From assembly GCA_907165135.1 (NCBI GenBank), contig OU015568.1, positions 9,796,001 through 9,860,000 of the forward strand: a stretch of DNA of 64,000 nt. The letters are read 5' to 3'. Numbering within the stretch: the first letter of the stretch is position 1; each line of letters starts with the position of its first letter. A model generated the notes under the pieces. It was given only the letters and a program-made list of their open reading frames with translations, made no database searches and had not been told where the DNA came from. Positions 53,711 through 57,469 of this stretch are shown here, piece by piece. Made by a program: the position numbers and the translations under genes. This DNA is from Oikopleura dioica. Taxonomy: Eukaryota; Animalia; Chordata.

Positions 53711-54828
53711 TTATTTCAAACTTTTCAGTTCTAAAACAAGAGGCCCTAGGGTCGTTTCAATATAATTCTTCATTGCTTCACAGGTTGGCCCAGTTTTCAA
53801 TTGAAAGTCTTCCAAGTTGCTATTCCAAAGTACTATTCCGTCTCCACCTCGGTCTTTTATGCCATAGAAAGCATGTTCAAGGTCATCTTTTGTGAGAAAC
53901 TCTGGTTTCATAGCAATGCTATGATATGATAGCATACTGTACTCGTTGATAATGAAACACTGGAGATGACAGTGTAAATTTGTCCCGAACACGGATTGCT
54001 TCGCCTGTTCTTGAGAACGTATACGCTGTGATGTTTGGAGAATTTTTTTGAGCAAGCGGAATATAACTTGAAGGAAAAATGGCGGTGGATTCATACCACA
54101 ACCAGTCGGTTTCGTCATCCTAGAAGATTTATACGATCAATATTTATCTTGAAAGTACCCATGTCACTGCTCTCCCATCACAGTTCATCTCTCCATTGAA
54201 TTGATTATGGCAATCAGGAAATCTATAATATCCCCACTTTCCTCCGGGTCTAAGCTTCTGACAAGTTTTCAATGTCTTCAGCATAAATTCTCTTGCAGCA
54301 TCATTGAAATCACGATGAGAATAATCTAACTGTTCATCTTCGGTCGCATTTGGATACATCTTCTTTGCTAGAAGAAGACTCTGGTCTCGATAGATTTGTC
54401 GACTGTCCCAGTTACGCTCCCAAAGTGGATCCCATTGCTCCCAGTCCAAAATTGCGATGCTGAAAGTCTCATTTTTCTGGTTTATATTTGACAATTTACC
54501 CATTGAACTCTTTATTTGGAATCATTTCGGTAACAACTCTAGCGACACTATCAAGGTGTCTATCCAAATCGCCAAGTTGTGGGAGCCCTCCATTGACAGC
54601 ATTACTATTTGCATCAAAGTAAGGCCACGTTCCAATCACATGCGAGTAGAGAATATTTACGACAGAGCCATTCCACGATTGATTCTCATTCGCTTCAATT
54701 CCGTATTTTTCCAATTGCAAGTCTATGCCATGCTTCGGACAGTTCTCTGAGGGGGTGTTCCAAAAAACTCGAAAAGACGGGTCTTCGATGGCTCCAAGGA
54801 ACCCAAAAAACTTTAGAATTTCTCTCAT
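53711..54828 (-). CDS. Hyaluronidase/chondroitinase, glycoside hydrolase family 56
   Basis: FRVFWNTPS..C, G.WPYF, VNGGLPQ, AILDWEQWDPLWERNW, RPGGKWGYYRFPDCHN, STAIFPS.Y, DGIVLW. Confidence 0.93.
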
Positions 54829-55062: not shown

Positions 55063-56498
55063 TTAATCAATCTCTGTGCCAGGATCATGAAGTCCCCAGT
55101 GTTCCAATTGACATTGAAGAGACCAAACACGGCAACAGATCCAGCACCATTCTGTATCACAAAATGGTGCCTGGCAGGTCATGTGGTTGCAGCCGGAAAT
55201 TTTCTCCGCTGGGGTTTGACAATCTGGGCATTTCTAAAAAAAGTTTTAACAGAAATCTTTTTCGGACCAACTTGTACCTTCATTTTTGCAATCAATGACT
55301 TAGAATTATCATTACTCGGTGCATTCGAACATTCGCCTTGATGAGCCTCTTCGTTACAATTAGCACAGAACTGGTAGTAGCAAACTGGGCAAGTTATAAT
55401 GCCGCCTTCTTTTGTCTCCACAAGAAATACACTTCCACAGCTTTGCTTTGGGCAAAAGAGCCTATTTTCTTGCTTGGAAAGGAAGAATTCTGTCGACATT
55501 GTTCCGTAGAGATCGTAAATTTCATCTCCAAAGAGTCGAAGAATCTGGGGTTTCCAGGTTTTATCAGGAACTGAATGACAGGCCGGACAGGCGAGCATCA
55601 CGCCGGAGGAATTGAAGGATAATGCTGGGCTTTTTCGTTCTTTGATTGAGTGTTCGGCGTAACGCTCGTAGCAGGGAAGACATGTGACGTGACAGGGCAG
55701 TCCAGATTTCTAAAAATGGAACTGAAATCAAGGAAGAAATTAAGCGTGTTTACCTGGAAAACAACGACGGGTTCTAGTCTTATTTCATCGAAACAAATGC
55801 AGCACAAATTTGAAGAACCGCCTCCTTGAAGCCGGATGTTCTCGGGAAGACGAAGTTGTGGAATGATGATTTGGTCACGATCGTGTTCTGTACAAATTGA
55901 ATTTTTCGAAGGATTTGGAACTTCGCAGGAGCATCTGGGCTTTGAAGAGATGAGGTAGCTTTGACATTGAGAGCAGGTGATTTTGGGATATGCAGGGGTT
56001 GGGCTTCGAGTGGTTTTGACGCATTCTTTGCAAATGGCGAAGTTGATTTCAGGAAAGTGAGGATGGTGCTCAACGGATTTGCCAAAGACAATCGAATTCA
56101 AATACTGAAAGAGTACGTTACAAATGGACATTTTGAGGGAAATCAAACGACATACTTTAAAAATCAGTACGGGGCAAGGTAATTTTACCGTTGAAAGGAT
56201 ATGTCCTCGAGATTCAGGCGGGAAGAGGATGAATTCAAAATGCTCCAAGGAGAAGAGATCGGATAGAACGGTCGTTGGAGTCAATTCGACTCCTGTAAGG
56301 ATGAGCCGTGAATCTGGTGCTTCTGAAAGATGTGTATGGGTGAAGAAGAAGGATCAAAAATGTGAACATACGGCACAAATCAAGAATATCTTTCACGGAA
56401 CAGTTTCGCTCAATTTCCAAATCGATCCTTTTCCCATTTTCTTTTTTCAGAAGCGAGCAAAGAACTCTCTCCCTAACCAACTTCCGCTCTTCATCCAT
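55063..56498 (-). CDS. PRKN: Parkin-like RBR E3 ubiquitin ligase (Ubl-RING0-RING1-IBR-RING2)
   Basis: Ubl SRLILTGVEL..TVLSD; RING0 FAICKEC..ITCSQC; RING1 CCIC..HVTCLPC..ACPAC..LRLFGDEIY; IBR FCPKQSCG..FCANCNEEAHQGEC; RING2 KCPDCQTPAEKISGCNHMTC..CDTEWCWICC..EHW. Confidence 0.85.
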
Positions 56499-56686: not shown

Positions 56687-57469
56687 ATGAAGATTTTCAA
56701 GACCTTGGGACTTCTAGCTGCAGTTGCTGCTGAAAGTTATACAGTAAGAGGCCATAATTATCATGCAGTTGTAATAATTTACCAAAAAATGACGCTTTTA
56801 TTTTTTAATTCCTCACTTTCATCCTTAATTTCTTGTTTTTAGGTGACTGAGGAAGTAACATTCGTCATTTACAACCGCTGGAGAAAAGTGGGCGATATCA
56901 AAATTGGTCTCTTTGGCGAGGTAGTCCCGAAAACGGCCAAGAACTTTTGCAAACTCGCTTCAGGGTCAGCAAGAGTCGGAAAATACGCAGGGTAAATGTA
57001 CGTGGTGATAGATTTTACAGCACTCTGGCATTCTTACTAACATTCTCTTAAGATCCAAGTTCCACCGAGTGATCGAGAATTTCATGATCCAAGGCGGCGA
57101 TTTTACCCGACACAACGGACAAGGAGGCTACTCCATTTACGGGCGCACTTTTCCCGATGAGAGCTTCGCCATTCCTCACAGCACTGGAGTCGTTTCGATG
57201 GCCAACAGAGGCCCAGATACAAATTCGTCCCAGTTTTTCATCACTACTGTGAAAACATCCTGGCTGGATGGTAAACATGTTGTTTTCGGAAAAGGTTAGA
57301 ATTTTATTATTGTTCGCTTTTCTAGCCTTTTATAGTTGTCGACGGCTGGGATGTCGTGAAGACAGTGGAGCGCTATGGAAAATACGACACCTTCAGAATC
57401 GAAAGAGCAAGTTGCCGAGAAATTTTCAACGAAGATCAATACGAAATCGATATAAACGGCGAAGAGTAA
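56687..57469 (+). CDS. Secreted cyclophilin B/C-like PPIase, copy 1
   Basis: Signal peptide [15 protein letters not shown]; [61 protein letters not shown]. Confidence 0.92.

What the first reader, a model, noticed from the sequence alone, without database searches (positions are those of the whole stretch)
55063..56498. Parkin appears to have lost both the PINK1 phospho-switch and the autoinhibitory latches
By-eye alignment to human Parkin shows three things. (1) No Ser/Thr at the Ubl Ser65 position (SDLFSLEHFEFILF; Phe, Glu or His depending on register). (2) Phospho-Ubl pocket K161->Y (PAYPKITC) and K211->I (NSICTEH), and H302->Q, with K151 and R305 kept. (3) Autoinhibition residues F146->N (INFAICK), W403 absent in a shortened REP (NAPSNDNSKSLI) and F463->G (EHWG). 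Catalytic C431, H433 and E444 are intact. Established: mutating F146, W403 or F463 de-represses Parkin. Inference: a constitutively open, PINK1-independent Parkin.
Basis: partly seen in the sequence, partly recalled or inferred. Interest (0 to 1): 0.7.

Follow-up and report, generated by a model that had tools for sequence, protein, structure and literature searches.

The report
Oikopleura Parkin without its phospho-switch
The only Parkin gene of the tiny marine chordate Oikopleura dioica is intact as an enzyme, but it has lost the serine that the kinase PINK1 normally phosphorylates, the pocket that receives that phosphate, and three residues that keep Parkin switched off; this makes it a natural version of laboratory "always-on" mutants, though its activity has not been tested.

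Summary
Window 55063-56498 (minus strand) holds a five-exon, 404-aa gene. It is identical to the annotated O. dioica (Okinawa) protein P0001 and is the only Parkin-like gene in the genome.

- **What is kept:** all zinc ligands and the catalytic Cys/His/Glu.
- **What is changed** (alignment of 42-49 Parkins; human numbering to Oikopleura residue): S65 to F71 (Tyr in another O. dioica lineage), K161 to Y126, R163 to K128, K211 to I157, H302 to Q259, F146 to N108, F463 to G395. The REP helix with W403 is deleted. K151, R305 and Y312 are kept.
- **How unusual this is:** every other Ubl-bearing Parkin sampled has Ser or Thr at position 65.
- **Relatives:** three from ocean transcriptomes also lack REP and F463. 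One keeps the whole switch (T65, R161, R163, K211) and two keep parts of it. This fits an order in which the latches went first and the switch decayed afterwards, but the tree does not prove that order.
- **Published support:** F146A and W403A rescue S65A, K161N and K211N in human Parkin.

- AlphaFold models look "open", but so does a nematode control, so they say nothing.
- Seven scans for motifs I recalled as typical of PINK1 found no PINK1-like kinase.
- A full PINK1 homology search could not be run, so independence from PINK1 remains an inference.

The parts
56372..56498 (-). Exon 1 (ATG at 56498; residues 1-42 plus the first base of codon 43). It encodes the N-terminal half of the Ubl.
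   Evidence: Sequence reading. The spliced CDS equals P0001.
56189..56322 (-). Exon 2 (residues 43-87). It encodes the C-terminal half of the Ubl and the start of the linker.
   Evidence: GT-AG introns of 49 and 84 nt on either side. RNA reads from another O. dioica lineage lie here.
56216..56471 (-). Ubl domain, residues about 10-78, interrupted by intron 1. It has a ubiquitin fold but a diverged sequence (50% identity between two O. dioica lineages).
   Evidence: AF2 pLDDT 85-96. VIA-align to ubiquitin: Z 10.4, rmsd 1.4 A over 69 residues. No Pfam hit. Identity by domain.
56237..56239 (-). Codon of Phe71, the position of human Ser65 (Tyr in the Bergen-type lineage). There is no Ser or Thr at residues 68-72.
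   Evidence: MAFFT. Ubiquitin structural ranges. Comparison with relative P0154.
55754..56104 (-). Exon 3 (residues 88-204): linker helix, RING0 and the first zinc-ligand pair of RING1.
55856..56050 (-). Shortened RING0 (residues 106-170) with eight zinc ligands kept: C112, C115, C131, C134, C145, C147, C158, H161. It lacks the roughly 14-residue W183 segment. It holds N108 (human F146), K113 (K151), Y126 (K161), K128 (R163) and I157 (K211).
   Evidence: hhalign against canonical RING0: probability 88%, E 3e-6. VIA-align of model 103-332 to Parkin R0RB: Z 14-15. Pfam PF17976 and a PDB phmmer search do not recognise it. Residue map.
55278..55709 (-). Exon 4 (residues 205-348): the rest of RING1, the IBR and the REP remnant.
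   Evidence: Pfam IBR 2.6e-11. Best PDB hits are all Parkin.
55467..55807 (-). RING1 (residues 187-285, interrupted by intron 3). It holds the phospho-ubiquitin pocket residues Q259 (human H302), R262 (R305) and Y269 (Y312). The zinc ligand C253 is replaced by C210, next to H211.
   Evidence: PF17978 (Parkin-type RING1) scores 26.5 bits against a cut-off of 26.6. Alignment.
55329..55466 (-). IBR domain (residues 286-331).
   Evidence: PF01485, 3e-12.
55278..55328 (-). REP remnant (residues 332-348). About 22 residues shorter than in mammals and without a Trp403 equivalent. Only the stretch just before RING2 remains.
   Evidence: Alignment. The model has a short helix at 339-346.
55063..55233 (-). 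Exon 5 (residues 349-404 plus TAA): RING2 with catalytic C363, H365 and E376; W394 followed by G395 in place of human F463; then a nine-residue acidic tail.
   Evidence: PF22605, 1e-9. Best PDB hits are Parkin RING2 at 1e-10. Residue map.

Best explanation
This is the single, intact Parkin (PRKN) orthologue of Oikopleura dioica. It is a Ubl-RING0-RING1-IBR-RING2 ubiquitin ligase whose catalytic machinery is complete. Its canonical activation switch has been dismantled at both ends.

- **Phospho-acceptor:** the Ubl residue at position 65 is Phe, or Tyr in a second lineage.
- **Phosphate-receiving pocket on RING0:** Tyr126, Lys128 and Ile157 stand in place of Lys161, Arg163 and Lys211.
- **Autoinhibitory contacts:** three that hold human Parkin shut are absent. 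These are the REP helix with Trp403 (deleted), Phe463 (now Gly) and Phe146 (now Asn).

The most likely working mode is inferred, not shown. The ligase is only weakly autoinhibited, and Ubl phosphorylation has no part in turning it on.

The comparative series suggests an order of events. The REP and Phe463 latches are missing in the whole clade of close relatives. The switch then decayed in steps: it is complete in one relative, partial in two, and gone in O. dioica. This mirrors the laboratory finding that latch mutations make Ser65, Lys161 and Lys211 dispensable.

It is left open whether phospho-ubiquitin made by a PINK1 kinase still recruits or tunes the enzyme through the largely kept RING1 pocket.
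For: **Gene model and identity**
-.
- A canonical Parkin query finds only this gene's exon 5, other RBR genes and polyubiquitin in the genome, so the gene is single-copy.

**Parkin orthology**
- Best PDB sequence hits for exons 4 and 5 are all Parkin.
- Beyond Oikopleura, the best hits of an HMMER search over 1.84 billion representatives are Parkins.
- In the tree the clade groups with Parkins against other RBR ligases, SH-aLRT 97.
- The RING0 profile matches canonical RING0 at 88% probability, E 3e-6.
- The R0-RING1-IBR model matches Parkin R0RB at Z 14-15.

**Residue losses and what is kept**
-.

**Purifying selection**
- Zinc ligands and catalytic residues are invariant across five divergent clade members.
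- RING2 is 89% identical between two O. dioica lineages against 50% for the Ubl.

**Transcription**
- The orthologue in another lineage is transcribed: a few RNA reads carry that lineage's own residues.

**Graded series in relatives**
- P0158 has T65, R161, R163, K211.
- P0154 has T65, Q161, K163, H211.
- P0159 has S65, Y161, V163, S211.
- All three lack REP/W403 and F463.

**Published mutagenesis**
- F146A, W403A and F463A/Y activate Parkin.
- F146A and W403A rescue S65A, Ubl deletion, K161N and K211N (PMC10027901; PMC11106057).
Against: - No activity data exist.
- The AF2 domain arrangement is uninformative, because the nematode control looks the same.
- Autoinhibition could be rebuilt by contacts I cannot see. 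Candidates are a nearly invariant hydrophobic linker motif (residues 73-96) and a new acidic C-terminal tail, both of unknown role.
- Nematode Parkins also lack REP and W403 yet keep the whole switch, so REP loss alone does not make the switch dispensable.
- The order of events rests on five sequences on long branches. Three of them come from unnamed ocean transcriptomes.
- In the tree P0158 and P0154 are sisters and P0159 is the outermost clade member. The partial pocket losses are therefore not nested and must be at least partly independent.
- The Bergen-type lineage has a Ser one residue before the aligned position.
Confidence: 0.6

Rival explanations
1. One reading: the enzyme is constitutively open, and O. 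dioica has no PINK1 at all. Parkin would then work entirely outside the PINK1 and phospho-ubiquitin system and be controlled only by expression, localisation or turnover.
For: - Everything listed for the best explanation.
- His302 is Gln only in O. dioica; all other clade members keep His.
- Seven degenerate-codon scans of the 64-Mb genome found no PINK1-like kinase context (41/42, 74, 83). The motifs, recalled from memory as typical of PINK1, were DFGCC, HRDxKSDN, KMM[WF]N, HRDxK...DFGC, ADxWAxG, a long spacing between the catalytic loop and DFG, and GNxxLMAPE.
- The one look-alike proved to be IRE1.
Against: - Motif scans miss diverged or intron-split motifs. This genome's Parkin has itself lost family hallmark motifs.
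- The kinase-family scan scored only 121 of 857 candidates.
- No full-length PINK1 search was possible.
- K113, R262 and Y269 of the phospho-ubiquitin pocket are conserved in both O. dioica lineages.
- A permanently active Parkin is expected to ubiquitinate itself and be unstable (discussed in PMC10027901).
Confidence: 0.35
2. Gating is kept by other means. The protein is still autoinhibited through compensating contacts and still switched on by PINK1, either through phospho-ubiquitin binding alone or through a different acceptor in or near the Ubl.
For: - The phospho-ubiquitin pocket is mostly kept.
- The Ubl keeps its fold and the Ile44-patch residues R48 and I50.
- The linker motif at residues 73-96 is almost invariant between lineages that are only 68% identical overall, which suggests a functional contact.
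- Bergen-type Ser70 and Okinawa Ser67 lie close to the site.
Against: - No Ser or Thr near the site is conserved among three O. dioica lineages.
- The receiving pocket is lost in both lineages.
- Three separate latch residues are lost at once.
- No PINK1 motif was found.
Confidence: 0.2
3. Change or loss of role. The gene is drifting away from mitochondrial quality control, through a new function or slow decay, and the regulatory losses only reflect relaxed constraint.
For: - The stem branch is very long, 1.41 changes per column.
- The Ubl and RING0 evolve fast.
- Pfam no longer recognises the RING0 or Ubl in the whole clade.
- Only a handful of RNA reads were found.
Against: - The reading frame is intact with canonical splice sites.
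- All roughly 30 zinc ligands and the catalytic triad are kept across at least five lineages.
- RING2 is 89% conserved between lineages.
- The RNA runs available are from another lineage, so the low read count is not a measure of expression.
Confidence: 0.12
4. Artefact: a wrong gene model or a misalignment creates the apparent losses.
For: - The Ubl and RING0 are too diverged for Pfam or phmmer.
- hhalign stops before the Ser65 stretch.
Against: - The model equals the independent annotation, and the same architecture occurs in a second lineage and in intron-free transcript contigs of relatives.
- The losses sit next to invariant Cys/His anchors (YPKITC, ICTEH, EHWG), so the register there is fixed.
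- No register gives a Ser or Thr at position 65 in this lineage.
Confidence: 0.03

Closest known systems
Canonical animal Parkin (human/rat PRKN, Drosophila parkin, Pediculus Parkin; PDB 5C1Z, 4K95, 5CAW, 6GLC)
   Same: - Ubl-RING0-RING1-IBR-RING2 order.
- All zinc ligands.
- Catalytic Cys/His/Glu.
- C-terminal His-Trp.
- K151, R305 and Y312 of the phospho-ubiquitin pocket.
- Best sequence and structure matches.
   Different: - No Ser or Thr at position 65.
- K161, R163 and K211 pocket lost.
- H302 is Gln.
- F146 is Asn.
- F463 is Gly.
- REP and W403 deleted.
- RING0 about 14 residues shorter.
- C253 ligand displaced.
- Ubl-RING0 linker about 30 residues instead of 65.
- An extra acidic tail.
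Engineered hyperactive human Parkin mutants (F146A, W403A, F463A/Y, V393D, A401D), alone or in cis with S65A, K161N or K211N
   Same: The same interfaces are disrupted (RING0:RING2 and REP:RING1), together with loss of the phospho-Ubl switch. In the laboratory the latch mutations rescue the switch mutations (PMC10027901).
   Different: - Those are single substitutions in an otherwise canonical protein, tested in depolarization-induced mitophagy assays.
- Here the changes are natural, multiple and fixed in a species complex.
- Their effect here is untested.
Nematode Parkin (PDR-1 type; P0021 Panagrellus, P0034 trichostrongylids)
   Same: Short REP region without W403, and a similar protein length of about 390 aa.
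   Different: Nematodes keep T65, K161, R163, K211, H302, F/Y146 and F463. Pfam recognises their RING0.
Unnamed ocean-transcriptome Parkins P0158, P0154 and P0159 (Tara-type samples; probably other appendicularians, taxon not established)
   Same: They form one clade with O. dioica. They share the displaced zinc ligand (Pro-Cys-His), the deleted REP, the loss of F463 and the acidic tail.
   Different: They keep Ser or Thr at 65 and His302. P0158 keeps the whole basic pocket. P0158 and P0154 keep F146, while P0159 has Thr there.

Membership tests
Parkin (PRKN) orthologue group of RBR E3 ligases | N-terminal ubiquitin-like domain | tested here: met
   The AF2 model of residues 10-79 superposes on ubiquitin at rmsd 1.4 A over 69 residues, Z 10.4. 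The sequence is too diverged for Pfam PF00240.
Parkin (PRKN) orthologue group of RBR E3 ligases | Parkin-specific RING0 two-zinc domain directly before RING1 | tested here: met
   - Eight Cys/His ligands are present in the right order.
- hhalign against canonical RING0 gives 88% probability, E 3e-6.
- The structural match starts at model residue 103-106, equal to Parkin residue 141-144.
- Caveat: Pfam PF17976 and a PDB phmmer search give no hit, and about 14 residues are missing.
Parkin (PRKN) orthologue group of RBR E3 ligases | RING1-IBR-RING2 module with a catalytic Cys in RING2 and Parkin-type RING1 | tested here: met
   - IBR 3e-12, and IBR_2 1e-9 on RING2.
- PF17978 scores 26.5 bits against a cut-off of 26.6, which is borderline.
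- C363, H365 and E376 align to C431, H433 and E444.
Parkin (PRKN) orthologue group of RBR E3 ligases | Closer to Parkins than to other RBR ligases, and the only such gene in the genome | tested here: met
   - PDB hits: Parkin 2.8e-11 and 1.1e-10, above ARIH1 and HOIP.
- HMMER ranking.
- Tree, SH-aLRT 97.
- Own-genome search.
- The clade sits at the base of the Parkins, as expected for long branches.
PINK1-gated Parkin (canonical activation mechanism) | Ser or Thr at Ubl position 65 as the PINK1 acceptor | tested here: not met
   Phe71 in the Okinawa lineage, Tyr in the Bergen type, Phe in a third lineage. All other Ubl-bearing Parkins sampled have Ser or Thr.
PINK1-gated Parkin (canonical activation mechanism) | Basic phospho-Ubl pocket on RING0 (K161, R163, K211) | tested here: not met
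   Y126, K128 and I157 in the Okinawa lineage; F, T and F in the Bergen type.
PINK1-gated Parkin (canonical activation mechanism) | Phospho-ubiquitin pocket (K151, H302, R305, Y312) | tested here: inconclusive
   K113, R262 and Y269 are kept; H302 is Gln259. Binding cannot be judged from sequence.
PINK1-gated Parkin (canonical activation mechanism) | Autoinhibitory latches: REP helix with W403, F463 on RING2, F146 on RING0 | tested here: not met
   REP is deleted, F463 is G395 and F146 is N108.
PINK1-gated Parkin (canonical activation mechanism) | A PINK1 kinase gene in the same genome | tested here: inconclusive
   - Seven scans for motifs recalled as typical of PINK1 were negative.
- The Pfam kinase scan was incomplete, with 121 of 857 candidates scored.
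- No PINK1 sequence was available by reference for a homology search.

The most novel reading that the evidence does not exclude
Oikopleura dioica has lost PINK1 and runs Parkin as a ligase with no phospho-switch and no latches. Its relatives would record the steps of the dismantling: latches first, then the pocket, then the acceptor. That would be a natural evolutionary replay of the intragenic-suppressor experiments done on human Parkin, and an animal in which Parkin is uncoupled from PINK1.
Probability: 0.35. Interest if true: 0.75.

Novelty: new variant of a known kind. Interest (0 to 1): 0.55.

Why it matters
Parkin activation by PINK1 is the central model of mitochondrial quality control in Parkinson's disease research. 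Drug programmes try to imitate the latch-opening mutations F146A and W403A.

A natural Parkin that has fixed equivalents of those mutations, and then discarded Ser65 and its receptor pocket, would show three things:
- that a de-repressed Parkin can be tolerated by a whole animal;
- which other changes accompany it, such as the conserved linker motif, the acidic tail and the shortened RING0;
- whether Parkin can work without PINK1.

The relatives that keep parts of the switch offer ready-made intermediates for biochemistry. I found no paper that mentions Oikopleura together with PINK1.

Tried and rejected
1. **AlphaFold2 as a test of "open versus closed".** The O. dioica model (pLDDT 81, pTM 0.61) fits the R0-RING1-IBR of phospho-ubiquitin-bound or activated Parkin (rmsd 4.1-4.5 A, Z 14-15). 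It fits autoinhibited Parkin less well (rmsd about 8.5 A, Z 10.6), and RING2 is not co-aligned. A nematode Parkin with all regulatory residues, folded with the same 42 sequences, behaves the same way: rmsd 3.3-3.7 A to activated R0RB against 24-32 A overall to closed forms. The arrangement is therefore rejected as evidence.

2. **A phosphomimetic reading (Glu69 at the Ser65 position).** The model's strand boundaries (residues 70-76) suggested it. Four lines pointed to Phe71 instead: the ungapped alignment from Gly47, MAFFT, the ubiquitin structural ranges, and the relative P0154. I dropped it to a minor alternative. hhalign of the Ubl profiles stops at residue 65 and cannot decide.

3. **The PINK1 hunt.** Degenerate-codon motif scans found only PAK, STE20, MLK, PIM-like, CK1, CAMK and NEK kinases. 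The one look-alike, with a long catalytic-loop-to-DFG spacing and the motif VIADFG, is IRE1. The Pfam PF00069 scan scores too few candidates to show absence.

4. **RNA evidence for this exact gene.** All raw-read RNA runs on offer come from another O. dioica lineage. Only 1-3 reads per run lay on exons 2 and 5 at 90-95% likeness, with no splice joints.

5. **Word-index protein searches.** These found only Oikopleura-type relatives, which is why the exhaustive HMMER search was used.

6. **Literature.** No paper links Oikopleura with PINK1. A broader search on Oikopleura with Parkin or mitophagy terms listed no Oikopleura paper among its top results, and the Oikopleura kinome search gave nothing relevant.

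7. **Complex prediction** was not used. It gives no interface location, and a failure would mean nothing.
Full report
**What is there**

On the minus strand of window 55063-56498 lies a five-exon gene. Its exons are 56498-56372, 56322-56189, 56104-55754, 55709-55278 and 55233-55063. The four introns are 49, 84, 44 and 44 nt long and all are GT-AG. I never typed the joined protein into a search tool. A word search with a stop-free reference returned database protein P0001 (404 aa, 'Oidioi.mRNA.OKI2018_I69.PAR.g11201', Oikopleura dioica). A local script that spliced the window's exons showed P0001 to be identical to my model, and from then on I used P0001 by id. The genome is therefore the Okinawa O. 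dioica assembly. Earlier notes of this scan say the same.

**Is it Parkin?**

Several independent lines say yes.
- Exon 4 (RING1-IBR) and exon 5 (RING2) have Parkin chains as their best PDB sequence hits: Pediculus Parkin at 2.8e-11 and fly Parkin RING2 at 1.1e-10. ARIH1 and HOIP score lower.
- Pfam finds IBR, IBR_2 and the Parkin-type RING1 family PF17978. The last is right at its threshold, 26.5 bits against 26.6.
- The RING0 and Ubl are too diverged for Pfam or phmmer.
- A profile-profile comparison nevertheless aligns the clade's RING0 to canonical RING0 at 88% probability, E 3e-6.
- The AlphaFold2 model (pLDDT 81) superposes residues 103-332 on Parkin R0-RING1-IBR at Z 14-15, and residues 10-79 on ubiquitin at rmsd 1.4 A.
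- An exhaustive HMMER search of 1.84 billion cluster representatives returns Parkins as the best hits outside the Oikopleura group.
- A maximum-likelihood tree puts the group with 37 Parkins against nine other RBR ligases, SH-aLRT 97, on a very long stem.
- A canonical Parkin used as a query against the whole genome finds only this gene, other RBR genes and polyubiquitin.

It is therefore the single Parkin orthologue.

**The observation**

For numbering I used P0061, a 465-residue mammalian Parkin returned by the search. It served only as a ruler for the human numbering. MAFFT alignments of 49 and 42 Parkins give the following.

| Human residue | O. dioica (Okinawa) | Note |
|---|---|---|
| S65 | F71 | Tyr in Bergen-type P0003 |
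| F146 | N108 | |
| K151 | K113 | kept |
| K161 | Y126 | |
| R163 | K128 | Thr in P0003 |
| K211 | I157 | |
| H302 | Q259 | |
| R305 | R262 | kept |
| Y312 | Y269 | kept |
| W403 | none | REP about 22 residues shorter |
| C431, H433, E444 | C363, H365, E376 | kept |
| W462 | W394 | kept |
| F463 | G395 | |

Most of the changed residues sit beside invariant Cys, His or Trp anchors, so their register is secure. The RING0 hhalign reproduces K161 to Tyr and R163 to Lys.

Only the Ser65 register needed care. The ungapped alignment from Gly47, MAFFT, the ubiquitin structural ranges (model 12-79 equals ubiquitin 1-73) and the nearest relative P0154 all give Phe71. The model's strand boundaries would allow Glu69. 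No register gives a Ser or Thr in this lineage, and no nearby Ser is conserved among three O. dioica lineages.

Across the cluster representatives sampled, every Parkin with a Ubl has Ser or Thr at position 65. K161, R163, K211 and F463 are nearly invariant.

**Comparative context**

The HMMER hits and their cluster members include three full-length relatives from ocean metatranscriptome samples: P0158, P0154 and P0159. Shorter fragments also turned up. The three full-length relatives form one clade with O. dioica and share several oddities:
- a displaced RING1 zinc ligand (Pro-Cys-His);
- a deleted REP;
- loss of Phe463 (HWG or HWN);
- an added acidic C-terminal tail.

The switch itself is graded.

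| Protein | 65 | 161 | 163 | 211 | 302 |
|---|---|---|---|---|---|
| P0158 | T | R | R | K | H |
| P0154 | T | Q | K | H | H |
| P0159 | S | Y | V | S | H |
| O. dioica (Okinawa) | F | Y | K | I | Q |

P0158 and P0154 also keep F146; P0159 has Thr there. Nematode Parkins (P0021, P0034; named) also lack REP and W403, but they keep every other regulatory residue.

The simplest reading is that the latches were lost first, in the common ancestor of the clade. The phospho-Ubl switch then decayed, completely so in O. dioica. The pocket losses in P0154 and P0159 are not nested on the tree, so they must be at least partly independent events.

**Mechanism**

The following is established from papers I read.
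- K161 and K211 bind the phosphorylated Ubl on RING0. K161N abolishes mitophagy (PMC11106057).
- F146A, W403A and F463A/Y activate Parkin in vitro.
- F146A and W403A rescue S65A, Ubl deletion, K161N and K211N in cis (PMC10027901).

The O. dioica protein combines natural equivalents of both classes of change. I therefore infer that it is a weakly autoinhibited ligase that does not use Ubl phosphorylation.

The gene is not decaying.
- The frame and the splice sites are intact.
- All zinc ligands and the catalytic triad are invariant in the clade.
- RING2 is 89% identical between two O. dioica lineages, while the Ubl is 50% and RING0 60%.
- RNA reads of another lineage carry that lineage's own residues over exons 2 and 5.

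**What is not shown**

First, openness. The AF2 model resembles activated rather than closed Parkin, but a nematode control does the same. I discard this evidence.

Second, independence from PINK1. Seven scans for motifs recalled as typical of PINK1 found no PINK1-like kinase. One look-alike is IRE1. Such scans are insensitive in this genome, and the Pfam kinase scan scored only 121 of 857 candidates. I also had no PINK1 sequence by reference, so the full homology search was left out. That stretch is named here as the missing step.

The phospho-ubiquitin pocket is mostly kept, so recruitment by phospho-ubiquitin remains possible.

**Verdict**

This is a new variant of a known kind of enzyme. 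It is interesting as a natural counterpart of engineered hyperactive Parkin and as a possible case of Parkin uncoupled from PINK1. Biochemistry and a proper PINK1 search are needed before either claim can stand.

Noticed in passing
window 55686-55697 (residues 209-212, Pro-Cys-His-Val): The RING1 zinc ligand that aligns to human C253 is Lys205. A Cys sits directly next to the His ligand instead (C210-H211). This odd Cys-His adjacency is shared by all clade members seen (P0003, P0154, P0158, P0159, and fragments P0026 and P0107), so it is real and old. How the second RING1 zinc site is built is unclear.
   Followed up: partly
window 56078-56233 (residues 73-96, spanning intron 2): The end of the Ubl and the linker (FILFPPESRGH-I/V-LSTYLNS-I/L-VFGK) are almost invariant between two O. 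dioica lineages that are 68% identical overall. The model puts a low-confidence helix at 84-94. Relatives have a similar hydrophobic helix there. It could be a counterpart of the ACT element or a new autoinhibitory contact.
   Followed up: partly
window 55066-55092 (residues 396-404): After His-Trp-Gly comes a nine-residue acidic tail. Canonical Parkins end 1-3 residues after HWF, whereas all clade members have acidic tails of 9-20 residues. Its function is unknown.
   Followed up: no
protein P0010 (768 aa, unnamed source): A protein of unknown organism joins an N-terminal kinase-like domain, which has HCSLSPNN in place of the catalytic-loop motif, to a complete Ubl-RING0-RBR Parkin. A second RING2-like repeat follows at the C-terminus.
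   Followed up: no
G000:C1, about ten loci, e.g. 9166669-9166743 and 11477576-11477650: At least twelve kinase genes carry HRDIKDENIL...IDFGC. They look like a lineage-specific expansion of PIM-like kinases, several of them clustered on the window's own chromosome.
   Followed up: no
L079 = G000:C2:7261300-7264300: An IRE1-type gene (luminal domain, kinase, and an RNase domain of KEN type). Its long spacing between the catalytic loop and DFG briefly looked PINK1-like.
   Followed up: yes
L077 (metatranscriptome contig of P0158), 3-581 and 524-1828: The transcript contig that carries the relative's Parkin ORF also has an upstream 192-codon ORF overlapping the Parkin start. It could be a polycistronic (operon-type) transcript, as is known in appendicularians.
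   Followed up: no
window 56843-56995 (+) and 54144-54828 (-): Judged by eye, the neighbours are a cyclophilin-type prolyl isomerase gene upstream (with a divergent promoter region about 350 nt from the Parkin ATG) and a hyaluronidase-like ORF downstream. Neither was tested.
   Followed up: no
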